Below are positions 4,924 to 52,729 of a DNA stretch of 64,000 nucleotides, one piece after another (the first letter of the stretch is position 1; every line of letters starts with the position of its first letter). The notes under the pieces were generated by a model that saw only the letters and a list, made by a program, of their open reading frames with translations, had not been told where the DNA came from and searched no databases. The position numbers were made by a program, and so were the translations under genes. The stretch is taken from positions 208,603 through 272,602 of IMG/VR virus record IMGVR_UViG_3300026484_000007; one strand, written 5' to 3'.

Positions 4924-5216
4924 ACCAAAATGCTAAAAATGAAATCTTAAAAGAAATAAGACAATTAAGGCAAAAATTTGAAGAGGATCTTAGAAATAAA
5001 AGATTCTCTTCGGATATACCAGAGAGATCTTTTGCAGATCAGTTTGAGCAAATTGTCCCACCATTAACATTTTTAATAGTGGTTTTATCTATATTGATTT
5101 TATTCATTGGTGATGTATACAATAAACATCAATTAAATAAATTAATTATCGAAAAAAATTGTAGTCAATTTTTAAATAAGATGCATGAAATAAGAGAAAT
5201 GAAGGAGAAAAAATGA
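4902..5216 (+). CDS. small membrane protein
   Basis: Single hydrophobic segment LTFLIVVLSILILFIG; lies between nrdA and nrdB. Confidence 0.6.
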   Translation: MCIMCELDQNAKNEILKEIRQLRQKFEEDLRNKRFSSDIPERSFADQFEQIVPPLTFLIVVLSILILFIGDVYNKHQLNKLIIEKNCSQFLNKMHEIREMKEKK

Positions 5217-8824: not shown

Positions 8825-10273
8825 ATGGGTTTTGATTTACTCGATATAAATAAATTTATTAAAGAAAAGGATGCTAAAGAAGTAACATCCGAAAAAACAT
8901 TTTTATTTACAAAAGGCGATTTTATTCCAGATCCAAATGGTTTATATAGTCCACAGATCTTCGAAGGAACTGGTATTAAAGGACAACGGGATAAATACGG
9001 ATACATATCTTTAAAAAATACAATTATGCATCCATTAATTTATAAGAATCTAAAAAAGATTGCTACAATTTTTTATTATGTAGCAACTTCTGAAAAACAC
9101 GTTGAAATTATTGATGGTGAACTTATAGAAACACCACCAGAAAACGGTGGTAAAACTGGATTAGACTTTCTAATAAATAATTGGAAAAAAATTAATTTAG
9201 ATAAATACAAGAAAGAAACGAATGAATTCTTTATTGAGTTTCTAAAGAAAGTTCAAGAAAAATTAATTTTTATTAATAAACTTCCAGTTATTCCAGTACT
9301 TTATCGACCTTATACTTTTGAACACGGACGAGTAATTGAAGATGAAATTACTGAAAAGTATAAAAAAATTTTATTAGAATACAAAAAAACTATGGGAGGT
9401 CTTTCCGGTCAGCCTTTGAATTCGTTGAATTCTAAAAATTTAACTGCGTCTGAAGATGCAGTTAGTTTAACTGGAAGAAGATCTACTATATCTAACATTG
9501 ATAACCCATTAGGTATTTCTGATGATAATGGATTAGAATTATTAAATTCATTTATTCAGAATAATGTAAATTCTTCAGAAAAAGTTCAAAAATACGTTCA
9601 GGATCTATATGATTATTTTATTTCTAAATTAGAGAAAAAAGAAGGTTTCTTTAGAAGTAATTTAGTAGGTAAAAGATTAGATAATGTATCAAGATTAGTT
9701 GCTAATGCTCGTCCAGATATACCAGTAGATTGCGTAGGTATTCCTTGGCATGTATTAATTAATATTTTTGATTATTACGTATTAGCTGAGTTAGAGCATA
9801 ATAAAGATGTCGCTGAAAAACTTGGTCTTGCTGACATTAGTACAGTAGACTTTGGAAAACACATCTATTATATCTATAAAAACTGTGATATTTATTGCAA
9901 GTCGTTTCCTGAAAGACAACAGATATGGATAGAATTACTTACAGAAATCTTTGATAAACATGATTATCTTAGAGTAGTATTTAAACGGGATCCAGGTTGG
10001 TCAGCGAATTCATTCTGGTCAGTAAAACCATTAATCTTAAAAGGATGTTCGTATTACATTGTTGTAAATTCATTTTATTACAAACCACTTGGTGGAGATA
10101 GTTTTAATACTAATATTCTAATTAAAGAATCTACTCAAAAATCTATTACTAAAGATTTAATTTTATCAAAGGATCCAAAAAAGATCCAAAAAAGATATAC
10201 GTTAGAATTTCCAGTAGCTAATGAAGCAAAAACATTAAAAAATTATTACGAAAAAAATAAAAAGGAGAAATAA
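8825..10273 (+). CDS. DNA-directed RNA polymerase beta' subunit, N-terminal fragment
   Basis: GLYSPQIF, YGYISL, LPVIPVLYRP, KKEGFFRSNLVGKRLD, VVFKRDP. Ends at PLGGD (NADFDGD position) followed by an unrelated 57-aa tail. Confidence 0.88.
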   Translation: MGFDLLDINKFIKEKDAKEVTSEKTFLFTKGDFIPDPNGLYSPQIFEGTGIKGQRDKYGYISLKNTIMHPLIYKNLKKIATIFYYVATSEKHVEIIDGELIETPPENGGKTGLDFLINNWKKINLDKYKKETNEFFIEFLKKVQEKLIFINKLPVIPVLYRPYTFEHGRVIEDEITEKYKKILLEYKKTMGGLSGQPLNSLNSKNLTASEDAVSLTGRRSTISNIDNPLGISDDNGLELLNSFIQNNVNSSEKVQKYVQDLYDYFISKLEKKEGFFRSNLVGKRLDNVSRLVANARPDIPVDCVGIPWHVLINIFDYYVLAELEHNKDVAEKLGLADISTVDFGKHIYYIYKNCDIYCKSFPERQQIWIELLTEIFDKHDYLRVVFKRDPGWSANSFWSVKPLILKGCSYYIVVNSFYYKPLGGDSFNTNILIKESTQKSITKDLILSKDPKKIQKRYTLEFPVANEAKTLKNYYEKNKKEK

Positions 10274-10974
10274 TGGCTAGAGCACCTAAAACAACAAGAC
10301 GAAAAAGAAAAAATCAAGAAGAATTACAAACAGCACAAAATACTCAAGATGTACAAACAACGTTAAACGAAGAAGGATCTTTAAAAGATCCAAACAAGTT
10401 AACTGATTTAACGGAACCGACAGATTTAAAAGATCAATCTAATTTAACTGATTTAACTGAGCCAACAGTTGAAATCGATAATGAATCTAAAAATGAATCT
10501 TTAAAAGATCTAACTGAGCCTACTATATCTACTGGCGAAACAACTGAGCCAACAGTTGAAAATGTATCTCAAGAAGATCCAACTGCAGAAGAGCTTAAAG
10601 AAACTTCAGAAAAAGAAATTTTAGAAGAAGCTAAAGAAGAAGCTAAAGAAGATACCAAATCTGCAAAAAAACGTAATACTAAAAAGCGATCTAAAAAAGA
10701 TTCTGAGGTTGAAGTCGCTCAATCCAATCAATCTAATCAGATCAATCAAGAATCTAAAAAAGATCGAAAAAAGATCTCTTTTTTAGATAAAGTAAAAATG
10801 GCTGCAAGAAATGAATTATCGGAAACCGAAAAATTAAAACAAGAATTAATTAAAAAATCAGTTTCTGATGTTTTAACTCAAGAATATCAAAATACCGTTT
10901 ATGTATCTAAAGCAGATCAAAATAAAATAAAAGATAAACATGTTACTTATAATATGTCAGATCTTGGATTTTAA
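10273..10974 (+). CDS. low-complexity charged protein with DLTEPT repeats
   Basis: AAGGAG RBS; basic N-terminus and acidic repeats. Confidence 0.75.
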   Translation: MARAPKTTRRKRKNQEELQTAQNTQDVQTTLNEEGSLKDPNKLTDLTEPTDLKDQSNLTDLTEPTVEIDNESKNESLKDLTEPTISTGETTEPTVENVSQEDPTAEELKETSEKEILEEAKEEAKEDTKSAKKRNTKKRSKKDSEVEVAQSNQSNQINQESKKDRKKISFLDKVKMAARNELSETEKLKQELIKKSVSDVLTQEYQNTVYVSKADQNKIKDKHVTYNMSDLGF

Positions 10975-10992
10975 TATTAAAAAGGAGAATGT

Positions 10993-11724
10993 ATGTATTT
11001 AGCGTTAATGATCGAAGAATCATTTAATGAATTTCTTCAAAAAAATAATCTTCCTCAAACTACTTTAGAAGAAACCCACTATTTAAAAACCGGAAAAAAT
11101 CCTGGTTCTTTTAATTTAATTGAAGAAGGAGCTTTAGCTCGAGGAGCTGGGCTTGGGGCTCTTGTAGGTACTGCTGCGGTAGGAACTGCTCTTGGTATGG
11201 ATCATAGTCACATGCATGACATGCGCGACGCTTACGATTTCGCTCATAATGATGAAACTGGATTAGAAAATTCAAAAATAAATCAAGGGATTAAAGATGC
11301 TTTAAAATCAGATAATGAAACTGAATTTAAAGACAATAATGGAGAAGCTCCAAAAGATAAACCAGATTTAATTGATTCTGCGGAAGAAAGAAAGAAAATC
11401 GATGAATTCGTGAAAAACTGGAATGCGGAACATAAAGACCATCCATTGTCGACTAACGACATTATTAGTAAATACAATATGACTCAAAATAAAGAATTTA
11501 CTCAACTTCAAAGCAGAATCGATAATGCAGATTTAAATAAATCTAAAGCATTCCAATCTAATTGGGATAGTCTAAAACAAGGCGTTGGTAATCTTTGGAG
11601 TGGTTCTAAAGAAGGGCTTAACGATAAAGCGCTTGGAGCATTAAAAGTTGGTGGAGCAGCAATTGGTGGTGGAGCAGCAATTGGTGCAACATTAGGTGGA
11701 ATTCTTGGAAATAATAGAAGATAA
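10993..11724 (+). CDS. glycine-zipper virion-like protein (paralog family)
   Basis: IEES and IEEG motifs, N-terminal GAGLGALVG segment, C-terminal GGAAIGGGAAIGATLGG. Confidence 0.6.
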   Translation: MYLALMIEESFNEFLQKNNLPQTTLEETHYLKTGKNPGSFNLIEEGALARGAGLGALVGTAAVGTALGMDHSHMHDMRDAYDFAHNDETGLENSKINQGIKDALKSDNETEFKDNNGEAPKDKPDLIDSAEERKKIDEFVKNWNAEHKDHPLSTNDIISKYNMTQNKEFTQLQSRIDNADLNKSKAFQSNWDSLKQGVGNLWSGSKEGLNDKALGALKVGGAAIGGGAAIGATLGGILGNNRR

Positions 11725-11773
11725 TAGAAGATAATATAAAATAAAAATAAAAATTTTATAAAAGGAAGCGAAT

Positions 11774-13126
11774 ATGGCTTATGTTTTTAAAAAAGACAAA
11801 AACGGTAAATTAAAATTGATTAAACCATCAACCTCGGCTACCTCAACGACCGACAAAAGTGATCTTTTAAAGATCACTAATTCTCATAATTCTCATACTT
11901 CACTCAAAAGAACAATTGAGGAAAATTCATCTGCTATTTTAGAAGTTCCTATAGAAAAAGAAACCGAAAAATTTATCGAGACTCGAGACTGGGTAATTCC
12001 AAAAAAATTCATGATGCCAGATTGGGTAGAAAAAAATTTAAAAGACTTTAAAGATCAAGCAAGAGAAATTATCTCAAACGCAGACGAATCTTCTATAGAT
12101 TCAATTAATCCTAAAATTAAAAAATTAATTGAAGAATTAATTCTTGATAATAAAGTTAAACCTAAGTATCCTTTAAATAAAAAGACTCTTGGAAAATTAT
12201 CGAATGAAATGTGGAAAGTCTTCGGTGAAGATGAATTCATGTATCGATATTGGATACTACAAGAAGCTGGATTTTTTCTAAGTACTTTTAAACCATCTGG
12301 ATTTGAACCTGAGGCTCTACAATTACCTGAAAAATTCGTTAAAAGAAAAGACGCATTATTAAAAGAATTTGAAAAACGAGTTAAAGAACACGGTAAAGAT
12401 AAAGCGGTAGCTTGGATTGATAAAGAATTTAATAATTTAACCAACGAGGTAATCGATTACTGGGAAGAAAAAGGTATTAACGTTGTAGATATGATTAGAT
12501 CAGGAGCAAGAGGTGGTCCAGCGGATATTAGAAAAATGCTTGTTGCTGTTGGGTTAAGTATTGATAGTTCAGGAAAACCAAACGACGTTATTATGACGTC
12601 ACAAATCGAAGGTTTATCTCAAACTCAATTCTTTCATTATTCTTCACAAGCAATTATGGCATTATATGCAAAATCTTCAGAAACTGCTGTTCCAGGTTAT
12701 CTTGCAAGAAAATTAAGTACAGTTGCGGACGCGGTAAATCTTTCAGAAGTTGAAGATTGTAAAACGAAGAGATTTTTGGAAGTAACAGTTCTTGATTCAG
12801 ATGTTCTTAATGCGTTAGATGGTAGAGTATTGCATACAGGTAAAGTTATTGATTCTGAAAAAGATACTAATTTAATTGGTAAAAAAATTAAAATTAGATC
12901 GCCTTTATATTGTAAGGCAACTGATGGTATATGCGCTACATGTTATAATAAAAAAATTATTCAGAAAATGAATTGGCAGCCTGGAGAAAAAATTGGGTTG
13001 CATGCAGCTACAACTCTTGGAGATCAAGCATTAGTAAACTTAACACTTAAAAAATCTCATGTTGGTCTTTCATTAAATATGGAAACCGTAGATTTAGAAA
13101 AAGATATTTTTCAATTCGCAGAGTGA
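11774..13126 (+). CDS. RNA polymerase beta' subunit, middle fragment (bridge helix, Zn site, trigger loop)
   Basis: MIRSGARG, EGLSQTQFF, ETAVPGYLARKL, EDC, IRSPLYC...GICATCY, GEKIGLHAATTLGD...LTLKKSHVG. Confidence 0.9.
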   Translation: MAYVFKKDKNGKLKLIKPSTSATSTTDKSDLLKITNSHNSHTSLKRTIEENSSAILEVPIEKETEKFIETRDWVIPKKFMMPDWVEKNLKDFKDQAREIISNADESSIDSINPKIKKLIEELILDNKVKPKYPLNKKTLGKLSNEMWKVFGEDEFMYRYWILQEAGFFLSTFKPSGFEPEALQLPEKFVKRKDALLKEFEKRVKEHGKDKAVAWIDKEFNNLTNEVIDYWEEKGINVVDMIRSGARGGPADIRKMLVAVGLSIDSSGKPNDVIMTSQIEGLSQTQFFHYSSQAIMALYAKSSETAVPGYLARKLSTVADAVNLSEVEDCKTKRFLEVTVLDSDVLNALDGRVLHTGKVIDSEKDTNLIGKKIKIRSPLYCKATDGICATCYNKKIIQKMNWQPGEKIGLHAATTLGDQALVNLTLKKSHVGLSLNMETVDLEKDIFQFAE

Positions 13127-19418: not shown

Positions 19419-22400
19419 ATGATCAAAAAAGATACGTCTGATGCTACATTAAAATTAAAATCTGCAAAATTTTATATAGATTTTCATAATGAAAAAAATA
19501 ATAAATTATTTTTTTATGAAGTTTATTCTAAGAAAAAAGGAACTGCTGGAGCAGAGCGTCTCGAATACGCTTATATGACTCCAGACGACGAAGTGATCTT
19601 TTACAAACCCATCGATGATATCGAAGAGCATGAAATACCAAAGAAAGATCTTCGAGAGTTTCTTCTTGGTAGAATTAATAGCATAGCGATGTTAAAATTA
19701 GGAGCTAGAGTTGATATTAAATCAAAATCTTCTAAACCTACTTTTAAAATTAAAGCGTTGAGCAATGAACCCGAAGTAATTCTTTTTGCTAGTATTATTT
19801 TAGGATTAAGACCTGCGCTAGATTTCATGGGAATAAAGTATAGTTTTAATAAGACTAAAGAAGGTTATAAATCTATAAAACTATCCACTCAAGATGGTAA
19901 AACTAAATATTTTAATATTTATGCTAACTCTTTATACGATGAATACGTTTTAAATGGAATGTCTTCTTTTATTAAGAAAATTGAATTCACTGAAGAAAAT
20001 TTATCTTCTAAAGATGTATTCATAACTTATTTCGATAATCGTTTTGGTAAAGGTTTATTTAATTCTTATAATCAAAAGTTAGTATCTTTTATAGATACAA
20101 CGACTGAGCAAATTTTAAGATCGTATGGTTATAGTACGGATCCATTAAAATTATTATGTATAACTATGCCTAAGAAAATACTAAACGAAGCAGTCGATGA
20201 TATCGATAATCTTGAAAATAAAAGAATTAGAATGGCTGAAAGTATTGCTCACTCAGCTTATAATGCAGTTTCGCAAGCTCTTGTAAAATTCAAGAAAGAA
20301 TCTAAATTAGATAACGTTAAATTACATATTCAAAAAGATTATATTATTAATAATCTTATTAACACTGGTATGGTTCAATGGAGTAATCCAGTTAACCCAT
20401 TAGAAGAATTAACTACTTCTGCAAAAATTACTAAAACTGGGGTTGGGAATCCATTAAAAGAACAGATCACTATAGACAAAAGGGATCTTAATGAAAGTTA
20501 TTTTGGAGTTGTATCTGCGACACATACTAATGAGTACGGTGGAATAGGTTTAAACCAAACTCTCGTAAATAAAATGATGATCAAAGATAGATTCGGAAGT
20601 ATTTTAATTAAAAAATTCCAAGATACTAATCCTTTTGAAATACTAAGTCCAATTGAAAGTATTGCTCCATTTATGGATACAGATGATACTACTAGAAAAG
20701 TTATGGGGAATCAGCAAACCTCACAATTCATTCAAGTTAAAAATCCAGATGTTCCTCTTGTTCAAACTGGTTTTGAAGCTTATATACCTTATATAGTATC
20801 TGATAGATTTGCAATGAAAGCTAAAAAACCTGGAACTGTTAAATTAGAAAAAGACTATATTATAATGAAATACAATGATGGTTCTGAAGAAATCTTTAGT
20901 ACTAAACCCACTAAAGCGAGAACTAAAAGAGGTCTTTATATTCCAATTGAATATAACGTTCTTGTAAAAGATGGTCAAAAAGTAAAAGAAGGAGAAATCC
21001 TTGCAGCAACTAATTCTTTAAAACACGGAAAATTAGGTATAGGAAAAAATTTAGTAGTCGCAGAAATGTCTTATCGAGGTATGAATTACGAAGATGGTTG
21101 GGTAATATGCGAAGACCTTAAAGAAAAATATCAAAGTTCTTTATATGAAAAAATTACTATAATTATTCCAGAAGGTGCTAAGATTCAAGATTTTAATATT
21201 GAATTAAATAAAAACACTAAACCTGGAGAAAAATTAATTTCGTATGTTACAAACGCAACTGAGTCTTTAGAATTCGATGAAGAAAATAGTATTACTGATG
21301 AAAATACTGATGATTTAAGTACAGGTAAAGAGATTAGAGGTAATACAGTAACTTACTATAGTATCGGTGGACAAATTGCAGATTTTGTAATAAAATTAAA
21401 TTCTACTAAAATTGATAAAAAAATTATAGAAAAATTTAAATTTCAAAATTCAGAAATTGAAAAAAAATTAAAGATTTGCGAAAAACTCAAAAATGAAATT
21501 AATAAATTAGATTGTAGAGATAACATTGAACATCTTGAAGCTCTTGAAGTTGGTGGACATAAAGCAAATAAAATGGAGCCAGAAGGAGCGATTATTGAAG
21601 TCTATATCGAAACAGAAAATCCAATCAGAAACGGATCAAAATTTACTTTAGCGAGTACTGGTGGTAAAGGTACTGTACAATACATTATTGATAAAGATAA
21701 AAAACCTTATACAAAAGAAACTGGATTAGAAATTGATTTTATTGCGACTCCGTTGTCAATCATTTCAAGAAAAAACCCAAGTATTATTTTACAATTGTAT
21801 CTTGGAAAAGTAATTTATTTTCTAAATAAAAAAGTTGAAGAATTAGCTAAAGAAAATAAAATTTCTTCGGTTAGAACTTTAATTACTAAAGTATTTGAAA
21901 GAATTGATAAATCAGATGATAAAGTTTATCTAAATCAATTAAAAGGATTCTTAAAAAATAAAGATGATTTTCTTAAAAAATATATTTTAAAACATGATCC
22001 TTTAAATAACCCAGCTTTCCCAGCAATTATGCCTCCATTCGGAAGTAAATTAAGTACGAAAGATATCGAAGATGCTGCAGATATTCTTGGAATTCCTTTA
22101 CAAGAACATGTAATAATTCCAGAAGAAGATAATAAAGAGACTAAATATAAAGTTACTGTTGGAATTATGCCAGTATTTTATTTAGAACATTTTCCAAAAG
22201 CTATGTCAGGGGTAAGAGGAAGTATTAATGTTAAAAATCAATTAACGACTGGACAAGGTCGTGCCGGAACTAAAGAAGGAAACGGAGCAATTAAACTTGG
22301 TTTATATGATATGTTTTCCGTTACATCAAGACGAGCAAATAAGTTCATTAAAGAAATGTGGGCAGTAAAATCAGATGATTACGAAGCGAAAAAAGAACTT

Positions 22401-22538
22401 CGAAAGAAAATCATTAAATCAGCCGAAACTGGCGAAGAAATAAATGTTTCTGATATTGAAGTAAAACCAGAAGATATTACTACCAAAAAATTGATTGAAG
22501 CATATTTTTATGGAGCATGTTTGCAGCCACGTTTCTAA
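19419..22538 (+). CDS. DNA-directed RNA polymerase beta subunit, main fragment
   Basis: NKRIR, NPLEEL, RDLNESYFGVV..THTNEYGGIGL, DDTTRKVMGNQQTSQ, GKNLVVA..GMNYEDG, GSKF..GGKGTV, PLSIISRKN, GAIKLG. Confidence 0.93.
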   Translation: MIKKDTSDATLKLKSAKFYIDFHNEKNNKLFFYEVYSKKKGTAGAERLEYAYMTPDDEVIFYKPIDDIEEHEIPKKDLREFLLGRINSIAMLKLGARVDIKSKSSKPTFKIKALSNEPEVILFASIILGLRPALDFMGIKYSFNKTKEGYKSIKLSTQDGKTKYFNIYANSLYDEYVLNGMSSFIKKIEFTEENLSSKDVFITYFDNRFGKGLFNSYNQKLVSFIDTTTEQILRSYGYSTDPLKLLCITMPKKILNEAVDDIDNLENKRIRMAESIAHSAYNAVSQALVKFKKESKLDNVKLHIQKDYIINNLINTGMVQWSNPVNPLEELTTSAKITKTGVGNPLKEQITIDKRDLNESYFGVVSATHTNEYGGIGLNQTLVNKMMIKDRFGSILIKKFQDTNPFEILSPIESIAPFMDTDDTTRKVMGNQQTSQFIQVKNPDVPLVQTGFEAYIPYIVSDRFAMKAKKPGTVKLEKDYIIMKYNDGSEEIFSTKPTKARTKRGLYIPIEYNVLVKDGQKVKEGEILAATNSLKHGKLGIGKNLVVAEMSYRGMNYEDGWVICEDLKEKYQSSLYEKITIIIPEGAKIQDFNIELNKNTKPGEKLISYVTNATESLEFDEENSITDENTDDLSTGKEIRGNTVTYYSIGGQIADFVIKLNSTKIDKKIIEKFKFQNSEIEKKLKICEKLKNEINKLDCRDNIEHLEALEVGGHKANKMEPEGAIIEVYIETENPIRNGSKFTLASTGGKGTVQYIIDKDKKPYTKETGLEIDFIATPLSIISRKNPSIILQLYLGKVIYFLNKKVEELAKENKISSVRTLITKVFERIDKSDDKVYLNQLKGFLKNKDDFLKKYILKHDPLNNPAFPAIMPPFGSKLSTKDIEDAADILGIPLQEHVIIPEEDNKETKYKVTVGIMPVFYLEHFPKAMSGVRGSINVKNQLTTGQGRAGTKEGNGAIKLGLYDMFSVTSRRANKFIKEMWAVKSDDYEAKKELRKKIIKSAETGEEINVSDIEVKPEDITTKKLIEAYFYGACLQPRF

Positions 22539-24880: not shown

Positions 24881-25714
24881 ATGTCAAAATATTCTGAAAT
24901 CTTAGGGCAACTTATTAATGAAAATATAAGCAAAGCTCATGATTATATCACAAATCAATTAATTATGGAACATCTTTTAAAAACTGGTAAAGTTACAATT
25001 GAAGAAGCTCAATTATTCAATCAAATGACGTATTCAGTGCTTTATGAAAGTTCTCATTTAATGGTACCAACAGTTGAAGAAATTCAAGAAGCGATGATGC
25101 CACCTGCGCCAGCTCAAATGGGTGCGCCAGCTCCAGGAGCAGCAGGAGAGGAACCAGTTCCAGCAATGAACGAAGCGCCAGCTCCAGCTCCAGCAGATGG
25201 AATTCCAAATGAGGGAGAACCAAGTCCTCAAGAAATTCAAGCTGCAATCGATGGTGGAGAAGCTCCAGCAGGTTTAAAAACATTAGTTGATCCAGAAACA
25301 GGAGAAAAATTTCAATTTGATCCAACAAGCGGATCTGTAATGCCTGAAGCTAAAGACGACATGCCAGTACCAGGAGATACAATGGGAGATTCTGCAGAAC
25401 CAGTTCCAGCCCCAGAAGCAGAACCAGCAGCTCCAACAGATGAACCAGCAGCTCCAACTGATCAAGCAGGTTTACCTAAAAAAGACGTAAGTGCTAGCGA
25501 AGGAAATGTTGAAGAATCTACTGCTGCAGAAGCTACAGCAGCTACTGCGGAAGAATCTAAAAAAGATCAAAATATTGAAGAATCTGCGAATGTAGACGCT
25601 TCTGCAAAAGAAGAAGCAAAAGAAGAAGCAAAAGAAGAAGCAAAAGAAGAAGCAAAAGAAGAATTAAATGAAAATGAATTACTAGTTCAATCATTAATGA
25701 ATCTTATAAAATAA
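24881..25714 (+). CDS. acidic Pro/Ala-rich prohead core/scaffold-like protein
   Basis: Many (I/L/V)xE motifs, (EEAK)4 repeat, N-terminal domain paralogous to the next gene. Confidence 0.5.
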   Translation: MSKYSEILGQLINENISKAHDYITNQLIMEHLLKTGKVTIEEAQLFNQMTYSVLYESSHLMVPTVEEIQEAMMPPAPAQMGAPAPGAAGEEPVPAMNEAPAPAPADGIPNEGEPSPQEIQAAIDGGEAPAGLKTLVDPETGEKFQFDPTSGSVMPEAKDDMPVPGDTMGDSAEPVPAPEAEPAAPTDEPAAPTDQAGLPKKDVSASEGNVEESTAAEATAATAEESKKDQNIEESANVDASAKEEAKEEAKEEAKEEAKEELNENELLVQSLMNLIK

Positions 25715-25745: not shown

Positions 25746-26108
25746 ATGGAAAACAATCCTACTATAGTAGATAAGGTACTTTCGAAGATTATCTTCGAAA
25801 ACCTTATTAAAAACGGAAAAGTTACTTTAGAAGAAGCTCAAATCATCAATGAAGCAATTATCGAAATCGTTGATAGATATAATCATACTATTATTGAAGA
25901 AACTGCAAAAATCAATACTTTAATGAATGTTCAAAATTCTCAGCCTCAGCAACCTCAACAACCTCAAATTAATGAAGCTGAAATGAATAGAATACTTCAA
26001 AGTATTGAGGAAGCAGCAATCGAAGCTACACAAAACAATCAAAAAATTATTGAAGAATCTGAAGAAATGTCAATTGCAGAAAAACTTGCATCTAAAGTTT
26101 TAAAATAA
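25746..26108 (+). CDS. paralog of preceding gene; prohead core-like
   Basis: ENLIKNGKVTLEEAQIIN vs EHLLKTGKVTIEEAQLFN; repeated IEE motifs. Confidence 0.55.
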   Translation: MENNPTIVDKVLSKIIFENLIKNGKVTLEEAQIINEAIIEIVDRYNHTIIEETAKINTLMNVQNSQPQQPQQPQINEAEMNRILQSIEEAAIEATQNNQKIIEESEEMSIAEKLASKVLK

Positions 26109-26144
26109 TTTTTAAAAAAATAAAAATCAAATTAAGGAGTACTA

Positions 26145-26653
26145 ATGAATTACTTTGAAAGAGTAAAATTACATGAAATTTGCGAAAGTGTAAAAGAAAC
26201 TTATCTTTTAAATAGCATCGAAGAAAATGCTAATGAAATCGAAGTTCTAAGAACTAAAAAATTCTTAACTGAAACATTTAATACAATTGAAAAATTATTA
26301 ATTGAAGAAGCAATTGCTGATGGTGTAAAAAAAGCAGCAATTATTGGAGCAGCAGGGTTAGCTGGAACAGCTGCAGGTTATGAACTTGGTCATGCTGCTG
26401 ATGCAGGGGAATTAGCAGCGGGAAAGTAATTGATCCAGCTGCCCCAGAAGAAGTTGTAGTTGATAAAAATTTAATTACTGCAGATGACGTTGAAAAGCGA
26501 GAGATGAATGCTTTTGCGTTATCTGACTTATACAAACTTGCTCAGCAAAATCCTAATGCTGTTTTATATGGAGGAGCGTTAGGAACAGCTGGGTTAGCTT
26601 CTGGTGCAGTCGCTGCTCAAGCAATGAATTCTCAGAATCCAAGAAGTAGATAA
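26145..26653 (+). CDS. glycine-zipper protein expressed as a 94-aa form and a ~169-aa -1 frameshift form
   Basis: 0-frame stops at 26429 right after G GGA AAG. The -1 frame stays open for 75 codons to TAA 26651-26653 and encodes the family's C-terminal GGALGTAGLASG zipper. Confidence 0.65.
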
Positions 26654-26667
26654 AAATTATAAAAATA

Positions 26668-26715
26668 TGGAGTTGTGATCTTTTTTAGATCGCTCTCCAG
26701 TTTTTTTGTCGTTAG
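26668..26715 (+). terminator. terminator on a GATC palindrome, with GTCGTTAG tail
   Basis: TGGAG..GATCTTTTTTAGATC..CTCCA then T7. Confidence 0.65.
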
Positions 26716-26750
26716 AAAAAATTCTGAAAAAATTCTGAAAAAAATTATAA

Positions 26751-26890
26751 AAAACTTGAGATTCGCGGACGTTGCGCTTCTGTAGATATCTAAAGATATA
26801 TAGCAGTTCTAAAATTATCAGAGTGGTTTTAGAACTCGTATATATCTTTGTGTATCCAAAATAGATGCTACATAGAAAATCAAGTTTTTC
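26751..26890. repeat. ~140-bp dispersed palindromic element, copy C
   Basis: Same core. Confidence 0.85.
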
Positions 26891-27033
26891 AATGTTTTCT
26901 TTTGATTGATTTTGATTAAGATTAATTTTAATTTTAATTTTAATTTTAATTAAATTTTATTTATAGCCAAAATCGATCTAACGAAGATAAAAATCTTTAA
27001 TTTAAAAATAATATTATATACTAAGGAGAAATA

Positions 27034-27876
27034 ATGAGTCTTTATACTTTAATTGAAGAAGCTTATAATTCTAAAGAAAAAGCTCTCGCGACAATGGGAC
27101 TTGGTGCTCTTGGAGCAGGAGTAGCTGCATATCATGGTCATAGCGTTGATCAATTAGATAATTTGATAGATAAAGAAACTGGATTAACCGATTTAGAAGC
27201 GAATAACTTTAGAGCAGACGCTGCTTTATCAAAAGATGGAATACTAGGGAAAGTGAAAGGAGTTTTTGATTTATCTACTGGTAAATTAGATCCTCGAGAA
27301 TTAGCTAAAGCTTATCAAACAGATCCAGATGTTAAAAATTTAATAGATGAAAAACTAGATCCTGAAAGCAAAAAATATATATTAAAAATTATGAATCTTC
27401 AAGATAAATTCAATGATCATCTTTTTCATATTGAGAATGATAAAAAAGAATTACCTGGGGTATTTAATGGTCATGCAAACGCAACTGCTTACGGAGCAGC
27501 AGGATTAATGGGTGGGGCAGCTCTTGGAGCAGCAGCGACATCAGATACGCTTAATCCTAAAAAAGAAACTAAGCAGTTAAAGAAAATTGAAAAAGATTAT
27601 GAAAAAATTTTAAAAGATAAGCAAAAGCTAGCAGAAGAGCTTGAAAAAGAAAAAGCTTTACAATCGACTGTAAAAGATTATCATTTAGAGTCGACTCCAG
27701 CGCCTCCAGCGCCTCAAGCGCCTCAAGCTCAACCAGCGCCAGTTCAGATACCATTTCATCCAAACGTTCAATATTATTATGATCCATTAAATCCATATGG
27801 TTTACCAGCTCAATCTACACAACCTACCCAACCTATTCAACCTATTCAACCTATTCAACCTACTTTATTAAGATAA
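27034..27876 (+). CDS. glycine-zipper virion-like protein with Pro/Gln tail
   Basis: LIEEA, GLGALGAG, GAAGLMGGAALGAA. Confidence 0.6.
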   Translation: MSLYTLIEEAYNSKEKALATMGLGALGAGVAAYHGHSVDQLDNLIDKETGLTDLEANNFRADAALSKDGILGKVKGVFDLSTGKLDPRELAKAYQTDPDVKNLIDEKLDPESKKYILKIMNLQDKFNDHLFHIENDKKELPGVFNGHANATAYGAAGLMGGAALGAAATSDTLNPKKETKQLKKIEKDYEKILKDKQKLAEELEKEKALQSTVKDYHLESTPAPPAPQAPQAQPAPVQIPFHPNVQYYYDPLNPYGLPAQSTQPTQPIQPIQPIQPTLLR

Positions 27877-27894: not shown

Positions 27895-29682
27895 ATGAAA
27901 AACGAGAAAAAAGAAATGAATTTTAAACCAAAAAAATTTAGAGAAATCGAAGAAAGTTTTTTAAAAAATCTTGGATTATATGGTGGATTGGGAGCAGCAG
28001 GAGCTGCTGCTGCAATCTATGGAAACGATCATTGGGATCCGAATGCGACTCATACTGAAGTTGTTGAAAAAGTAAAACATGGAGTAGGCGCGACTGGGGA
28101 TAAAGCTGCATGGGACGCGCATGTAAAAAAGGAAAATGAATTTATAAATAATGAAACAGCTTCCGATTTTAATAAATTAATGAAGGGTAATTTTAGTAAT
28201 TCTAAGAACGATTACCAGGAATACCTAAAACAAACAGAGACTATCGATGATTTTAGAAAACTGACACCAGAACAGCAAAAACATTATATTCTTAGCTTAG
28301 CGGGATATGATTTCGATCATCCTGAAGCTTCTAAAAATACTTTAGCATTAAAGTTTGCTCAAGATTTTTATGCTCAAGAATTAGCTAAACAGTATCCTGA
28401 GGCTAAAAACCCTGAAATTTTTCAAACTATGGCTAAGAATTTCTTTGATAATAATAATACTAATGATACTTGGATGTTTAATAAAGATAATAAATTCGTT
28501 CAAGCTCAAGCAGGAGCTGAAAATTCATTCAACGATGCTTTAAAATTAAACAGTCCTAAAATTGATTTTAAAAATGATTGGACTACTTTTACTCAAAATA
28601 AAAATCAAGATTATATGAACATGGGAAGAATTTTATCAACAGTTGATGGAAATGGTAATGATAATGGCAACAATTTAGTAAATTTTGGAGATTTTATTAA
28701 AAAAGATGGAACGTTTGATTTCAATAAAGCTTCGCAATTTTATAATGGAGATGTTAATAAAGTTAAAGAATTATATAAAACATTTATCGATGCCGCTGAT
28801 ACTGACGCAGGCGATACGTTTTCAGGAGACAATATTAAAAATAAAAATCCTTACCCAAATCCGAATGGATTTTTTGATCATATTTCAAATTATTTTTCAA
28901 AAGGTAATATGCCTTTTAATAAAATTAATTCCATTGATGATTTAAAAGCTTGGAATGAAAAACTTTTAGAGACACAACCAAATGCTGCAAAAATATCAAA
29001 TTATGATGCTGTTTATAGTGGATTTTTTAATCCTGATACTATGCATCCAGCTGGAACATTAAACAGTTCTCAAGGGACTGATCTTGATTCTAATTTAGAT
29101 TTTTCAAAATTAACTTTAAAAAGCGATACTACGACACCGTCACCTGTAAAAACAGATTTTGATCAATTCAATAAAAAATATGAATCCTATAAACCATACG
29201 GAGACCAGGCAAATATTTTTATAAAAAACTGGAGTAATTCTACTGTCTTTGATGGACAAGGTAATGTAAAAGATACAGATTCTGTAGTTAATCCAAATGA
29301 AAAGTGGAGAGAATTTGATTATGATAAAAATGGTAAGATAGATGAAAAAGATTTTGAAGCTTTTAAAAAGTCGGACGAATATCATAAAAAATTAGAAGAA
29401 TACAGAAACAAACATCATTCTGAATACGAAAAAAAATTTTTAGAAAATTATAAAGGCAAAATTCCCGAAAAATATAATCCGGGGCATGATGAAATAATCA
29501 AAGAAAAGAAAGAAGTAAAAGGTATTACTACTAAACCGATGGCTGGTCTTGTAGGAGCTGGAGCTGGACTTGCTGCAGCAGGTATAAGTTCTGCAATCGC
29601 TAACGCAGCAAAAAAACCTAATCATTCGCAGTTCCCAGCTCATCCAACGTATTCGCCGTATCCAGCATATCCTCATAGATAA
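27895..29682 (+). CDS. large glycine-zipper protein with EF-hand-like loop
   Basis: IEES, GGLGAAGAAA, DYDKNGKIDEKD, GLVGAGAGLAAAG. Confidence 0.6.
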   Translation: MKNEKKEMNFKPKKFREIEESFLKNLGLYGGLGAAGAAAAIYGNDHWDPNATHTEVVEKVKHGVGATGDKAAWDAHVKKENEFINNETASDFNKLMKGNFSNSKNDYQEYLKQTETIDDFRKLTPEQQKHYILSLAGYDFDHPEASKNTLALKFAQDFYAQELAKQYPEAKNPEIFQTMAKNFFDNNNTNDTWMFNKDNKFVQAQAGAENSFNDALKLNSPKIDFKNDWTTFTQNKNQDYMNMGRILSTVDGNGNDNGNNLVNFGDFIKKDGTFDFNKASQFYNGDVNKVKELYKTFIDAADTDAGDTFSGDNIKNKNPYPNPNGFFDHISNYFSKGNMPFNKINSIDDLKAWNEKLLETQPNAAKISNYDAVYSGFFNPDTMHPAGTLNSSQGTDLDSNLDFSKLTLKSDTTTPSPVKTDFDQFNKKYESYKPYGDQANIFIKNWSNSTVFDGQGNVKDTDSVVNPNEKWREFDYDKNGKIDEKDFEAFKKSDEYHKKLEEYRNKHHSEYEKKFLENYKGKIPEKYNPGHDEIIKEKKEVKGITTKPMAGLVGAGAGLAAAGISSAIANAAKKPNHSQFPAHPTYSPYPAYPHR

Positions 29683-36729: not shown

Positions 36730-38181
36730 ATGGGTAAAAATAACACCGGTAACTCTAGTCCACAAATTCCAGGAATGGAAATTGAAGAACTTGATATAAA
36801 AACTTTAGCAAATTCCGGATCAGGTATTAAAGCAAATAAAATTCATTTAGTTGTTTTGGGTCAATTACCTGGATTCAATTCCGAAATTGATCCAAATTTT
36901 GCTTTAGAAAAATTAAATTTAAGAAACATTCCATTGATTGATTTTATTCCAGTTTCTTATAGTATACCTTTAATTAATAAAATGATGTCAGGAGCTTCAG
37001 AAGGATTATCTAAATTTAGCGCGATGTTAGCTGAAGGTGAATTTGGAACTATGGGATTATATTTAAAAAATGGATTAAGTTCAAGTTATAACTCTTTTAA
37101 ATCTCTTCTTTCATCGGCAGCAAATTCTGTCAATCAAAAAGGATTCGTAGGCGCTTCGACATCTGCTCTTGCTGATGGAGTTCAGAATTTGACAAAGTTA
37201 GCAGATTCTACTTCATTGTATAACTATGAAGCTTCTCCAGAAAACGAATGTAATTTTTTATTTAATTTACTTTTAATGAGATACGTGAATTTGAATTGGG
37301 GGGTAGACGCCAAATCGCATATTTCTTCTTACCTTAAAGAAGATAAAAAAAATAAACAAGATGAAGCTAAAATAAAACAAGGATCGGAAGAATACTTAGG
37401 AGTAAGATTAATTGCTGCAAATGATGCTATGTATAATGAATCAATTAGTAATTCATTTGGACAAAATGAAGCTTTAAATGTCTTATCAAATAACCCGTTA
37501 GTTAACGCATTTTCTGGAGCGGCGACGTCTCTTTTCAATAAAGGAGCAAACGCAATTACAAACGCTACAAAAATTAATGCTCTGAATACAGTACAGAATC
37601 TCCCTAAACTAAGTTATGGAGATGCATTGAAAGTCTTTGAAGGATCTAGTACTGGTAATATAATTACTCAAATTGCTCAAAGTAAATTTCTTGGAATGAA
37701 TATAGCTTTACCAAAAGCTTTTAATAGTTCAAATTTTTCGGATAATTTTAGTATAACAGTGAAGTTATCTTCTCCGAGTGGACATCCAATTGATATTCAA
37801 AATTATATTATAAATCCTTTAAAAATTTTCTTATCTATGGCAGCTCCAATTACGCAAAATCTTGAAACATATTATTTACCATTATTATGGAAAGTACAAG
37901 GTTATGGTATTCATAATGATTTAGTAGCTTATATAAATAATATAACTATAATGAAAGGCGGAATGGAAAATTCAGTCAATGATTATCTTCAACCAACAAT
38001 GATTGAAGTAAGATTAACTTTAAGTACGATTTCTGAAACAATGGCTGCTGTAGCTGCTCCAGATGTGCTTGTTTCAGATACAAACGAACGAAACGCGATT
38101 GGTATGACTACTCCTTTAAGATCAGCTGAATCTATGGACCAATCCAAATATAAAAGAGAAAAATACACTGTGAAATTATAA
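36730..38181 (+). CDS. probable baseplate/tail-tube initiator (gp48/gp54-like)
   Basis: C-terminal tube-fold pattern FSITVKL...YINNITIMKGG...PTMIEVRLTL; follows the tape-measure candidate. Confidence 0.45.
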   Translation: MGKNNTGNSSPQIPGMEIEELDIKTLANSGSGIKANKIHLVVLGQLPGFNSEIDPNFALEKLNLRNIPLIDFIPVSYSIPLINKMMSGASEGLSKFSAMLAEGEFGTMGLYLKNGLSSSYNSFKSLLSSAANSVNQKGFVGASTSALADGVQNLTKLADSTSLYNYEASPENECNFLFNLLLMRYVNLNWGVDAKSHISSYLKEDKKNKQDEAKIKQGSEEYLGVRLIAANDAMYNESISNSFGQNEALNVLSNNPLVNAFSGAATSLFNKGANAITNATKINALNTVQNLPKLSYGDALKVFEGSSTGNIITQIAQSKFLGMNIALPKAFNSSNFSDNFSITVKLSSPSGHPIDIQNYIINPLKIFLSMAAPITQNLETYYLPLLWKVQGYGIHNDLVAYINNITIMKGGMENSVNDYLQPTMIEVRLTLSTISETMAAVAAPDVLVSDTNERNAIGMTTPLRSAESMDQSKYKREKYTVKL

Positions 38182-39094: not shown

Positions 39095-41458
39095 ATGCCT
39101 ACAAACACAAACAATATAAATCATAAAAATTATAAATTAAAAATTCTTCAAGAGGCATCTTGGGAAGATGCTTTTGAAGATGAAGATCCAGTTGATGATG
39201 TTGTGGATAGTGCGTCAGCGCTAAACTCTCACGAACAGTCGCTTAAAGCAATATCATCTTTAGAAGATCTCGAAAAGATCGATAAACAGTTTGATTCATT
39301 ATATAAAAATTTTCTTGATAAAAATGATGATATTAATCTTTTTTCAGCGAAAGTTCAACGAATTGAATTGAGTAAAACATCTCAATTATATAAAAGAGAA
39401 AAAGAAAAAGAAGAGCCTGATGATCCTTTCGATGATCATAAACAAGCTCAGGAAGAATTAAATAAACTTTTCAATAATGAATCTAATGATATTCTTAAGA
39501 TTTTCCAATCTCAAACTATTCATAATAATAGAAAAGATCTTTATGAGATGTACGATGAAATCGCTGATATAAATTATATTGCGTATAAAATGCTAAGAGT
39601 GTATCTTGATAATATTTTAATTAAGAATGCTCAAACTAAAACATTCATTAATATCAAAGAAAATGAAGATAATAAAAATTTAGCTAAAATCGATGATACT
39701 AAATTAGATTTTATTAAAAAGATGCTTGATATGTTTTTAGTATTTTTTGATATTCAAAATAAGTTAAAAAACCAAATTGTTCCAAAGACTTTAAAGTACG
39801 GAGATTTTTATATTGAAGTTGTTGATCTTTCAAAGATCGATAATATTCTTTATAGACAACCTCAATTATTAACTGAAAATTTCGTAATTGAAAATAATGG
39901 AAGGAAAAAAACTTATAAAAATGTTTCTTACGCTTATCTTGAATTACCGTATAAAGAAAATTTTATGGAGTCTATGGATGCTGAAAACATTAATGAATCT
40001 AAATTCGGATCTAAAAAAGATTCGATTCATGATTTAAATAATTTAGCTCCAGCAGGCAATAATTTTGAAAATTTGGAAGAATCCTTTCAATACAAACTTG
40101 AAAAATTACGAGATAAATTATCGGCGAGAGTTCTTGAAGAAAGCGATATTCCTTTTTTAAAAAGAAATGATAATGAAGAATTTGATATTGAAAATTTATT
40201 TAAAATGGATCTTGATAAGATCGAAAATATTTATTTAAGATTACAAGACCCAAGTAAAGTTCTTAAAGTAGAGCAAGATGGAGTACTTTATGGGTATTTA
40301 GTAATCGAAGATGTCGATAGAGAAAAAAATGGGGATGAAGAAGAGATAAACATATACAAACGATTTTTATCGGATAATGAAAGTGGATCAAATGATGATG
40401 TAAATAAAAATGTTACAAAAAATATTGCTGGAGAAATTTCAGAGAAAATCTCAGAAAGACTTGCGGAATTTATTAATCAGAAAGGTGATTTTGAAGCTAT
40501 TCCAGATGAACTTAAAGCATCATTAAGAGTAATTATTTATCAAAAATTACTTAAGAAATCTAAGATAAAATTTAGATTTTTAGAAACTTCTGATATGGTA
40601 AATTTTCATACAGTGATTGATAAATTTGCTCCATATGGAACGTCAATTTTCGATCCAATTATTCAACCAGTAAAAATGTATACTATTGGATTAATGACTT
40701 CGATAGTATCAAGACTTAGTAGAGCTGCAGTGATTCGAAAATGGAATATTGAAGTAGGTAATAAAAGAAACTATCAAGCTGTAATCGAGCAAGTTAAAAA
40801 AGATCTTCGTAATAAATCAGTAACATACGATAGTCTTACTAGTATTAAAAATATATCAAAAATGATTACCGATTTTAAAGATATTGCGACAGTTACTAGA
40901 GATGGTCAAAGATTTATCGATCTTGAAGTGATGCCAATGCATGATCGATCTTTACCTATTCAAGAATTACAAGATCTAAAAACAGAATTAATTGCTGCGA
41001 CTGGAATTCCTGCGACTTATTTAAATATGCCAGATGCAGTTGATCTTAGAGAGACTCTTGTAAATATTAATATCAATTTTGCAAATACTATTATTAGTCA
41101 GCAAAGTTATATCGAAGATGGTCTGAATATTTTATTTAATATTATTATTAAAAAATTATTAAATTTAAATGGAATACCAGATAAAGGTTTCAATATATCT
41201 AGTATTTTTAAATTAACTTTAAACACTCCATTAGTACTTCAATTACAACAGAGTGAAGCTCTTGTTGGAAGTATAATTAATATTATTGGAGCATTGAATC
41301 AAGCTCAGCTTCAGATAGATCCATTAAAATTATTAGAAATGTATATACCTCAAATGAATTGGGAAGCATTGAAAAAATCTGGAGAAGAATTAACTCGAGA
41401 CGAAATCAAAAAGCAAATTATGATGCAACAAGACGGTCAGCAAGCTGGAGGATTTTAA
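39095..41458 (+). CDS. portal protein, T4 gp20-like
   Basis: LYEMYDEI, LKYGDFYIE, PYGTSIFDP, SRLSRAAVIRKWNIEVGN, LIAATGIPATYL. Confidence 0.8.
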   Translation: MPTNTNNINHKNYKLKILQEASWEDAFEDEDPVDDVVDSASALNSHEQSLKAISSLEDLEKIDKQFDSLYKNFLDKNDDINLFSAKVQRIELSKTSQLYKREKEKEEPDDPFDDHKQAQEELNKLFNNESNDILKIFQSQTIHNNRKDLYEMYDEIADINYIAYKMLRVYLDNILIKNAQTKTFINIKENEDNKNLAKIDDTKLDFIKKMLDMFLVFFDIQNKLKNQIVPKTLKYGDFYIEVVDLSKIDNILYRQPQLLTENFVIENNGRKKTYKNVSYAYLELPYKENFMESMDAENINESKFGSKKDSIHDLNNLAPAGNNFENLEESFQYKLEKLRDKLSARVLEESDIPFLKRNDNEEFDIENLFKMDLDKIENIYLRLQDPSKVLKVEQDGVLYGYLVIEDVDREKNGDEEEINIYKRFLSDNESGSNDDVNKNVTKNIAGEISEKISERLAEFINQKGDFEAIPDELKASLRVIIYQKLLKKSKIKFRFLETSDMVNFHTVIDKFAPYGTSIFDPIIQPVKMYTIGLMTSIVSRLSRAAVIRKWNIEVGNKRNYQAVIEQVKKDLRNKSVTYDSLTSIKNISKMITDFKDIATVTRDGQRFIDLEVMPMHDRSLPIQELQDLKTELIAATGIPATYLNMPDAVDLRETLVNININFANTIISQQSYIEDGLNILFNIIIKKLLNLNGIPDKGFNISSIFKLTLNTPLVLQLQQSEALVGSIINIIGALNQAQLQIDPLKLLEMYIPQMNWEALKKSGEELTRDEIKKQIMMQQDGQQAGGF

Positions 41459-50509: not shown

Positions 50510-50916
50510 ATTCAGAACTTATCTTATACAAGTATCTTATTACAGATAAAATACGATCTTTAAAAGATCTTTTTAATCTTAATCCAGATGAAAAATTAAT
50601 TTATGCAATAGATAATTTATTAGAGAGCGCTATTCTTTTTGAATCTTTAAATGATTCAAAACTAGAAAAAATTTCAGAAGAATTATTTAATCTTCATGAA
50701 AGATTATATTCGGAAATAGAAAATATAGTTCATAAAAAATTCCAAAATGAATTATTAAATGAAAAAATTATTAAAGAAAAGCAAGAGTACTACGAAGAGA
50801 TCTTAAAAAGATCACAAACTGATTTAGACAAAAAAGAATATGAAGATATCGAATCTCTCGAATTTCAATTGAAAAAGGATATAAGAAAGGATACAAGAAA
50901 GGATACTAAAAAATGA
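50506..50916 (+). CDS. hypothetical helical protein
   Basis: Translationally coupled to both neighbours. Confidence 0.7.
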   Translation: MNSELILYKYLITDKIRSLKDLFNLNPDEKLIYAIDNLLESAILFESLNDSKLEKISEELFNLHERLYSEIENIVHKKFQNELLNEKIIKEKQEYYEEILKRSQTDLDKKEYEDIESLEFQLKKDIRKDTRKDTKK

Positions 50917-52100: not shown

Positions 52101-52112
52101 AAAGGAGAAATT

Positions 52113-52682: not shown

Positions 52683-52729
52683 AAAATTATTAAAATTATT
52701 AAATTTAAATTTATTAAAAAGGAGAAAAT

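What the first reader, a model, noticed from the sequence alone, without database searches (positions are those of the whole stretch)
26405..26653. Programmed -1 frameshift (G GGA AAG) adding a second glycine zipper
Seen: the ORF ends GCG GGA AAG TAA, with the heptamer at 26420-26426. The -1 frame continues VIDPAAPEE...YGGALGTAGLASGAVAAQAMNSQNPRSR for 75 codons with no RBS of its own, and an SD-like AGGGGA lies about 10 nt upstream of the heptamer. Known: GGGAAAG is the lambda gpG/gpGT slippery site, and an upstream internal SD stimulates -1 shifts as in dnaX. Here the gene looks like a Gly-zipper family member rather than a typical tail chaperone, so the shift would set the ratio of one-zipper to two-zipper forms.
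Basis: partly seen in the sequence, partly recalled or inferred. Interest (0 to 1): 0.7.

Follow-up and report, generated by a model that had tools for sequence, protein, structure and literature searches.

The report
Conserved -1 frameshift in jumbo-phage gene
A small gene of an uncultured 273-kb hydrothermal-vent phage ends on the classic slippery sequence G GGA AAG plus a stop, and three diverged relatives keep exactly this arrangement, so ribosomes almost certainly slip back one base there to make a second, longer protein carrying an extra glycine-rich segment.

Summary
The 94-codon ORF 26145-26429 ends GCG GGA AAG TAA. The -1 frame is open for 75 codons to 26653 and encodes a second Gly/Ala-rich "zipper". 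An AGGGGA lies 9 nt upstream of the heptamer.

Five contigs from other metagenomes form two further lineages, 61-63% identical in the N part with synonymous divergence of 0.7-1.3. All keep the heptamer in the same phase, an immediate stop and an open -1 frame. In the two lineages with a complete C part, that frame has no ATG, GTG or TTG at all. The heptamer uses codons that are rare in this genome (AAG 9.7% of Lys, GCG 15.6% of Ala). The only long invariant nucleotide block is AGCGGGAAAGTA. All lineages carry a Shine-Dalgarno-like element about 10 nt upstream, as in dnaX. No conserved downstream hairpin was found.

Single-ORF relatives carry the C-part module in frame, and stand-alone short and long family members both exist. 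An assembly error, a pseudogene and two separate genes are therefore all unlikely.

The family has a helical-hairpin N domain followed by Gly zippers and has no known function. The gene lies in an array of similar genes between RNA-polymerase and head genes. This is a new member of a known kind of recoding, and it is not a tail chaperone.

The parts
26134..26139 (+). Shine-Dalgarno AAGGAG of the gene, 5 nt before ATG 26145
   Evidence: Read directly from the sequence. It shows that this phage's genes use canonical SD pairing.
26145..26429 (+). Zero-frame ORF, 94 aa: helical-hairpin N domain (aa 1-~62) followed by Gly/Ala zipper 1
   Evidence: ORF. It has 76 relatives in the representative library. 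The AF2 model has helices 3-27 and 31-77, with pLDDT 75-80 over aa 1-50.
26334..26399 (+). Gly/Ala-rich zipper 1 (aa 64-85)
   Evidence: The highest Kyte-Doolittle 19-residue window scores 1.14.
26399..26401 (+). TGA that closes the -1 frame upstream, confining any frame change to 26402-26426
   Evidence: The relatives have the equivalent stop 21-27 nt before the heptamer end.
26405..26410 (+). Internal SD-like AGGGGA, 9 nt upstream of the heptamer (putative 5' stimulator)
   Evidence: Anti-SD duplex energy is -6.5 kcal/mol, in the top 1.2% of coding positions. Relatives have AGGAG (-6.6) or AGGA (-3.9) at the same distance.
26420..26426 (+). Slippery heptamer G GGA AAG
   Evidence: It is invariant in 6 sequences from 3 lineages. 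It is built from rare codons.
26427..26429 (+). Zero-frame stop TAA directly after the heptamer
   Evidence: The relatives have TAA or TAG at the same position.
26426..26653 (+). -1 frame extension: 75 codons plus stop (linker and zipper 2), giving a 169-aa trans-frame product
   Evidence: It is homologous to the in-frame C-terminal module of single-ORF relatives (hhalign probability 89%, E 2.4e-6). dN/dS is 0.46-0.60.
26558..26626 (+). Gly/Ala-rich zipper 2 (extension aa 45-67), preceded by a conserved NPNA motif
   Evidence: The highest Kyte-Doolittle 19-residue window scores 1.36.
26668..26722 (+). Terminator hairpin, T run and the genome-wide motif TTTTTGTCGTTAGAAAAAAT, which together end the transcription unit
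   Evidence: Fold energy is -18.8 kcal/mol with z -5.7. The motif occurs about 20 times per strand in the genome and follows the gene in relatives.

Best explanation
This is a genuine, evolutionarily conserved programmed -1 ribosomal frameshift. Most ribosomes translate 26145-26429 and terminate at TAA, giving a 94-aa protein with a helical-hairpin N domain and one Gly/Ala zipper. A fraction slip back one base on G GGA AAG: tRNA-Gly re-pairs GGA to GGG and tRNA-Lys re-pairs AAG to AAA. Those ribosomes then read GTA ATT GAT and continue to 26653, giving a 169-aa protein (junction ...A-A-G-K-V-I-D-P...) with a linker and a second zipper.

Slippage is probably stimulated in two ways. The SD-like element 9-10 nt upstream can pair with the 16S rRNA tail, as in dnaX. 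The stop codon in the A site may add a pause. Both are inferred, not shown.

The two products correspond to the short and long forms that occur as separate ordinary genes elsewhere in the family. The site therefore fixes a ratio of short to long form from one mRNA (inferred).

The proteins belong to an uncharacterised jumbo-phage family that occurs in arrays between virion RNA-polymerase genes and head genes. My best guess, at low confidence, is that they are self-associating virion-internal or membrane-active proteins.
For: Shown:
1. The heptamer is in phase and abuts the stop, and the two frames overlap by only 25 nt.
2. Lineages P0002 (L016, L017) and P0078 (L018-L020) come from at least 4 other samples. 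They keep GCG GGA AAG plus a stop and an open -1 frame of 79-80 codons ending in a homologous zipper.
3. L017 and L020 have no ATG, GTG or TTG anywhere in the C frame.
4. dS between lineages is 0.7-1.3, yet AGCGGGAAAGTA is the only long invariant block.
5. The codons are rare: P(GCG GGA AAG | A-G-K) = 0.008 per lineage.
6. SD-like pairing sits at -9/-10 in all lineages, in the top 1-7% of coding positions, and is made with rare codons GGG and AGG. This spacing falls in the 9-14 nt range for -1 stimulators, and G_GGA_AAG is highly shift-prone in E. coli (PMC5009743).
7. The C-part profile matches the in-frame C-terminal module of single-ORF relatives. C-part dN/dS is below 1.
8. The frameshifted genes form one clade (SH-aLRT 90) whose sister is a 187-aa single ORF.
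9. Stand-alone short forms (P0049, P0057) and a two-zipper 159-aa form (P0022) exist.
10. An independent contig is identical across the site.
Against: - There is no protein, ribosome-profiling or reporter evidence, so the efficiency is unknown.
- No conserved downstream hairpin or pseudoknot was found (z -0.8 to -1.2).
- Read-level support is thin: one low-depth Logan contig bridges the site, and the run that best holds the window was filtered out.
- P0002 and P0078 are close to each other in the N part (86%), so there are effectively two to three independent lineages.
- In the window itself an internal ATG at 26504 could also give a 49-aa product.
- C-part pairwise similarity is weak (BLASTP E 0.1).
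- The host, and hence its anti-SD sequence, is unknown.
Confidence: 0.88

Rival explanations
1. Assembly or sequencing indel: the true gene is one uninterrupted 169-codon ORF, and the stop is an artefact of the metagenome assembly.
For: The genome is a metagenome-assembled IMG/VR record. Only one low-depth contig bridging the site could be laid.
Against: Five contigs from other assemblies and samples have the same frame arrangement at 61-63% protein identity to the window. The X5 contig is identical across 26309-26507. The site has only 3-nt homopolymers.
Confidence: 0.01
2. Ancestral frameshift mutation: the gene is truncated to 94 aa and the downstream frame is an untranslated remnant.
For: Stand-alone short family members exist, so a truncated form could be functional by itself.
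Against: The -1 frame stays open for 75-80 codons in three lineages separated by dS 0.7-1.3, where the chance of 75 open codons is about 0.005. C-part dN/dS is 0.46-0.60 with conserved blocks. The rare-codon heptamer and the SD-like element are conserved.
Confidence: 0.03
3. Two separate genes: the C part is initiated on its own (ATG 26504 in the window) or by termination-reinitiation at a non-canonical codon near the stop.
For: The window has an in-frame ATG at 26504, giving a 49-aa ORF that contains zipper 2. ATT follows the stop region in most sequences.
Against: L017 and L020 have no ATG, GTG or TTG in the entire C frame, and L016 lacks the ATT. No SD lies at initiation distance from 26504 or from the ATT. 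The 26 codons before ATG 26504 begin with the conserved V-I-D...P.E motif. This model does not explain why the heptamer is conserved with rare codons.
Confidence: 0.04

Closest known systems
Phage lambda gpG/gpGT tail-assembly-chaperone frameshift (and its homologues in tailed phages)
   Same: Both use the heptamer G GGA AAG near the end of a small ORF. In both, a -1 shift yields a C-terminally extended product that shares the N-terminal part, so the two proteins are made in a fixed ratio (PMC5009743).
   Different: This gene is not between major-tail and tape-measure genes. It has no tail-chaperone Pfam or PHROG match. Here the zero-frame stop abuts the heptamer and an upstream SD-like element is conserved. 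The extension is a Gly/Ala zipper rather than a tail-tube-binding T domain.
E. coli dnaX (tau/gamma) -1 frameshift
   Same: Both have an X XXA AAG-type heptamer decoded by tRNA-Lys and an internal Shine-Dalgarno-like stimulator about 10 nt upstream (PMC5009743).
   Different: dnaX also has a strong 3' stem-loop, and none is conserved here. In dnaX the shift truncates the protein, whereas here it extends it by 75 residues.
C-terminal extension of phage structural proteins by -1 frameshifting (e.g. T7 gene 10A/10B; from my own knowledge, not tested here)
   Same: A minor, longer isoform of a phage protein is made by a -1 slip close to the end of the ORF.
   Different: The gene family and the heptamer differ. 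Whether the present proteins are structural at all is unknown.
T4 internal proteins with a capsid-targeting sequence
   Same: Both are arrays of small, highly diverse genes that share only a short N-terminal motif ending in (L/I)-x-E (concept from PMC3012670).
   Different: No T4-type prohead protease (PF03420) was detected in the genome. There are no virion proteomics data. The resemblance is a lead only.

Membership tests
Programmed -1 ribosomal frameshift, bacterial/phage type | Slippery heptamer X XXY YYZ in the zero-frame phase | tested here: met
   G GGA AAG at 26420-26426 is in phase 2. It is the only one of 9 intragenic GGGAAAG copies in that phase.
Programmed -1 ribosomal frameshift, bacterial/phage type | A -1 ORF that overlaps the site, has no start of its own and is under coding constraint | tested here: met
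   There is no ATG, GTG or TTG in the C frame of L017 and L020. dN/dS is 0.46-0.60. The C part matches the in-frame module of relatives.
Programmed -1 ribosomal frameshift, bacterial/phage type | Conservation of the site at synonymous positions across diverged relatives | tested here: met
   AGCGGGAAAGTA is invariant at dS 0.7-1.3. The codons are rare, with P = 0.008 per lineage.
Programmed -1 ribosomal frameshift, bacterial/phage type | Stimulatory element: 5' SD-like sequence at 9-14 nt, or a 3' structure | tested here: met
   A 5' SD-like element lies at 9-10 nt in all lineages, in the top 1-7% of coding positions. A 3' structure was looked for and not found.
Programmed -1 ribosomal frameshift, bacterial/phage type | Trans-frame protein actually produced | not testable with these tools
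   This needs a reporter assay or mass spectrometry.
Tail assembly chaperone G/GT | Position between the major tail and tape-measure genes, and homology to chaperone families | tested here: not met
   The neighbours are RNAP subunits, unknown paralogues, a virion protein and the portal. There is no Pfam or PHROG hit.
Pfam glycine-zipper families (PF13488, PF13441, PF13436, PF05433) | Match to the family HMM | tested here: not met
   Neither piece has a Pfam hit at E<=0.01. The only trace is a weak language-model neighbour carrying PF13441, at rank 65 with score 0.70.
T4-like internal head proteins (capsid-targeting sequence) | N-terminal targeting motif ending (L/I)xE shared by otherwise unrelated neighbours | tested here: inconclusive
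   The motif [LI][LI]xE[ESN][YF] is seen in many neighbouring or zipper-bearing genes here and in L014 and L021. No statistical test or cleavage data exist.
T4-like internal head proteins (capsid-targeting sequence) | Cognate T4-type prohead protease in the genome | tested here: not met
   PF03420 has no match at E<=1 in the 272.6-kb genome. Distant phiKZ-type proteases might escape this model.

The most novel reading that the evidence does not exclude
The frameshift sets the stoichiometry of a hetero-oligomer built from one-zipper and two-zipper subunits. This oligomer would belong to a so far unrecognised class of jumbo-phage head-internal or ejected proteins. Those proteins would be marked by a T4-CTS-like N-terminal (L/I)xE motif and would insert into or remodel host membranes on infection. 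Recoding would then be part of the assembly logic of jumbo-phage ejection machinery, in the way G/GT is for tails.
Probability: 0.15. Interest if true: 0.7.

Novelty: new member of a known kind. Interest (0 to 1): 0.5.

Why it matters
Outside tail chaperones, capsid decoration, dnaX and IS elements, few conserved -1 frameshifts are documented in phage genes, and I found none reported for jumbo phages. This case is clean:
- the heptamer abuts the stop;
- a dnaX-like upstream SD element is present;
- no 3' structure is involved;
- the downstream frame has no possible start.

It affects annotation, because gene callers list only the 94-aa product and miss 75 codons. It also offers a compact natural test case for SD-plus-stop-stimulated slippage in a genome of about 28% GC. 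Finally, it flags an unstudied, widespread family (76 clusters at 50% identity) of helical-hairpin plus Gly-zipper proteins in vent and marine jumbo phages.

Tried and rejected
- **Cultured relatives.** Megablast and tblastn against GenBank phages found none.
- **Direct searches with the two pieces.** The search for related loci in viral contigs found nothing. The word-indexed protein search with the N piece found only the window's own protein.
- **DNA pattern scans.** A 30-mer taken from a relative's loose end, and the degenerate site motif, gave nothing in viral contigs. In metagenome contigs the motif gave 18 hits, of which only the window's own contig is real and the rest are chance matches.
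- **Read laying.** The second gave only fragmentary Logan contigs.
- **Downstream RNA structure.** Folds are not better than shuffles and are not conserved. A window-only hairpin that encloses the heptamer (z -3) is absent in relatives and would be melted by the ribosome, so I rejected it as a stimulator.
- **Rfam.** There are no meaningful hits at 26000-27100.
- **Structure.** The AF2 model is a generic helical hairpin with a disordered zipper. Foldseek against viral models gave nothing at E<=0.001. The Atlas search gave no informative neighbour.
- **Complex prediction.** Predicting the N piece with the C piece gave no answer, with a score of 0.02. This is not evidence either way.
- **Transcriptional slippage.** Rejected, because the longest homopolymer at the site is 3 nt.
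- **Alternative genetic code.** Rejected, because reading through TAA in frame 0 meets another stop 10 codons later.
- **Short relatives P0049, P0057 and P0081.** I checked these for further frameshifts. They are genuine short genes.

Full report
**1. What is in the sequence**

The window is the last 64 kb of a 272.6-kb IMG/VR virus record, 97% complete, with GC 0.19-0.34 and all genes on the + strand. Public runs that hold it are hydrothermal-vent metagenomes.

The ORF 26145-26429 (94 aa) has an AAGGAG ribosome-binding site at 26134-26139 and ends GCG GGA AAG TAA. GGGAAAG at 26420-26426 is in the X XXY YYZ phase. The zero-frame stop follows it directly. AGGGGA lies at 26405-26410. The -1 frame runs 75 codons to a stop at 26651-26653 and contains a second Gly/Ala-rich hydrophobic segment.

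The -1 frame is closed upstream by TGA at 26399, so the two frames overlap for only 25 nt, ending at the heptamer. Over the 225 nt of the extension the other two frames have 7 and 8 stops. The composition-based chance of 75 open codons is about 0.005.

Slippery A/T heptamers near ORF ends are common in this AT-rich genome, so that feature alone proves little. However, of the 9 GGGAAAG copies inside + strand genes, only this one is in phase, and it abuts the stop.

**2. Is it an artefact?**

Read laying gave little. In the other, a 199-nt Logan contig from a different sample and study (X5) matched 26309-26507 with no difference and no gap, at depth 2.4. The stronger evidence comes from comparison with relatives.

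An exhaustive HMMER search with the 94-aa product found 76 related cluster representatives. The nearest, P0002, is also 94 aa, is 63% identical and ends ...L-A-G-K. A further search found P0078, also 94 aa and ending ...E-A-G-K.

Their DNA comes from five contigs: L016-L020, from ENA ERZ23491723, ERZ23491583 and ERZ940667 and from JGI 3300041922. In every case it reads GCG GGA AAG followed at once by TAA or TAG. An open -1 frame follows, beginning V-I-D or V-V-N and ending in a homologous NPNA-plus-zipper module and a stop. In each, the -1 frame is closed 21-27 nt upstream of the heptamer end. An assembly error in the window is therefore excluded.

**3. Is the downstream frame translated, and how?**

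Where the C part is complete (L017, 79 codons; L020, 80 codons), it contains no ATG, GTG or TTG at all. It therefore cannot be a separate gene. L016 also lacks the ATT that might otherwise be proposed as a restart codon.

Synonymous divergence between lineages is 0.7-1.3. dN/dS is 0.12-0.42 for the N part and 0.46-0.60 for the C part, which has conserved blocks. A dead remnant would not have stayed open.

The only extended invariant nucleotide block in the alignment is AGCGGGAAAGTA. In this genome AAG is 9.7% of Lys codons and GCG 15.6% of Ala codons. Each appears in this gene only at the heptamer. Given A-G-K, the chance of GCG GGA AAG is 0.008 per lineage.

A profile of the three C parts matches the in-frame C-terminal module of single-ORF relatives (an E-W-M-R-Q-N-P-like motif plus zipper), with hhalign probability 89% and E 2.4e-6. 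On a tree of N domains the three frameshifted genes form one clade (SH-aLRT 90). Its sister, P0003, is an uninterrupted 187-codon ORF. The tree rests on only 75 columns, so its resolution is limited.

**4. Mechanism**

According to the recoding review PMC5009743, G_GGA_AAG is highly shift-prone in E. coli, and internal SD stimulators of -1 shifts act at 9-14 nt.

All lineages have an SD-like element ending 9-10 nt before the heptamer: AGGGG in the window, AGGAG in L016 and L017, and AGGA in L018-L020. The encoded residues differ (A-G-E, S-G-A, D-R-T), and rare codons are used (GGG 7%, AGG 2.6%).

The duplex energies with the canonical anti-SD are -6.5, -6.6 and -3.9 kcal/mol. These fall in the top 1.2%, 1.1% and 7% of in-phase coding positions of the genome.

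No downstream hairpin is better than shuffles or conserved. The abutting stop may prolong the pause with tRNA-Lys in the P site. That step is my inference.

The predicted products are a 94-aa form and a 169-aa form with junction A-A-G-K-V-I-D-P. The efficiency cannot be estimated from sequence.

**5. What the gene is**

Neither piece, nor the neighbouring genes, matches Pfam or PHROGs. No cultured phage has a relative.

The family has a conserved N domain of about 62 aa. The model is a helical hairpin with pLDDT 75-80 and has no informative structural neighbours. After it come variable regions with one or two Gly/Ala zippers.

Family members span a range of forms:
- N domain only, 74 aa, followed by a terminator (L021);
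- N domain plus one zipper, 101-110 aa, confirmed to be complete genes;
- two zippers in a single ORF, 159 aa (P0022).

Both frameshift products thus have ordinary-gene counterparts. This fits the view that both are functional and that the site fixes their ratio.

The zippers have Kyte-Doolittle 19-residue scores of 1.1-1.4, which is borderline for membrane helices.

The gene is the last of a transcription unit. A terminator hairpin lies at 26668-26699, with dG -18.8 and z -5.7.

It sits in an array of similar proteins. p280 and p595 downstream each have two such segments, and six or more genes elsewhere in the genome do too. The array lies between split multisubunit RNA-polymerase genes of the jumbo-phage type and head genes, namely a virion protein at 36730-38181 and the portal at 39095-41458. 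The related phage L014 has a syntenic array of about ten paralogues.

Many of these genes share an N-terminal motif ending (L/I)(L/I)xE. This is reminiscent of the T4 capsid-targeting sequence shared by otherwise diverse internal proteins (PMC3012670). However, no T4-type prohead protease model matches the genome. I therefore hold the idea of head-internal or ejected, self-associating or membrane-active proteins only as a low-confidence guess. A complex prediction of the two pieces gave no answer.

**6. Comparison and verdict**

Mechanistically this combines the heptamer of lambda G/GT with the dnaX type of 5' stimulator, but it has no conserved 3' structure and the stop abuts the site. It is not a member of the tail-chaperone family, because both context and homology tests fail. 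It is not a member of any Pfam Gly-zipper family.

It is a new member of a known kind of recoding, in a gene family and a phage group (jumbo phages) where I found no such case reported.

My confidence that it is a real, selected -1 frameshift is about 0.88. My confidence in any specific protein function is low.

Noticed in passing
window 26668-26722; also 6964, 7814, 32151, 41472, 49333, 55410 and about 30 more sites in the genome; L020:560-590; L042:610-655; L021:7240-7275: A GC-rich terminator hairpin is followed by the nearly invariant motif TTTTTTTGTCGTTAGAAAAAAT. It occurs about 20 times on each strand of the 272.6-kb genome, always after genes. A TTTTTTTGTCG(T/C)TA version follows the same gene in related phages. 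It looks like a terminator/promoter junction, possibly for the phage's own RNA polymerase.
   Followed up: partly
window 24881-25714 and 25746-26108: The two genes just upstream share an N-terminal motif, L(L/I)K(T/N)GKVT(I/L)EEAQ. They appear to be paralogues, and L014 and L021 have counterparts at the same position. The longer one has a Pro/Ala/Glu-rich low-complexity middle.
   Followed up: no
window 27034-27876, 27895-29682, 10993-11724; genome 14343-15005, 192536-193705, 200306-202800: Many genes of this phage carry one or two Gly/Ala zipper segments. Many also begin with a short motif ending (L/I)(L/I)xE followed by S/N/E and an aromatic residue. This could be a targeting or cleavage signal like the T4 capsid-targeting sequence.
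   Followed up: partly
window 26723-27033: The 380-nt spacer after the gene holds direct repeats (AAAAATTCTGA twice; TTAATTTTAA-type tandem repeats at 26920-26960) and a long imperfect hairpin at about 26781-26861. Its only Rfam match is a chance-level hit.
   Followed up: no
window 49547-57845: This is a cluster of at least three radical-SAM-domain genes (49547-50509, 50913-52100, 56751-57845) in the very AT-rich end of the genome (GC about 0.2). It may be a nucleotide- or peptide-modification module.
   Followed up: no
window 8825-13126 and 19419-22538: These are split beta/beta'-like RNA-polymerase subunit genes of the kind found in phiKZ-like jumbo phages. They lie beside ribonucleotide reductase genes at 2623-6283.
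   Followed up: no
runs X1 and X5, contigs of 1194 and 850 nt matching window 26218-26273 at 87%: The same vent samples hold a second, related phage with a homologue of this gene. Its N domain reads ...V-K-E-N-Y-L-L-N-A..., probably close to P0005. Its contigs could not be retrieved.
   Followed up: partly
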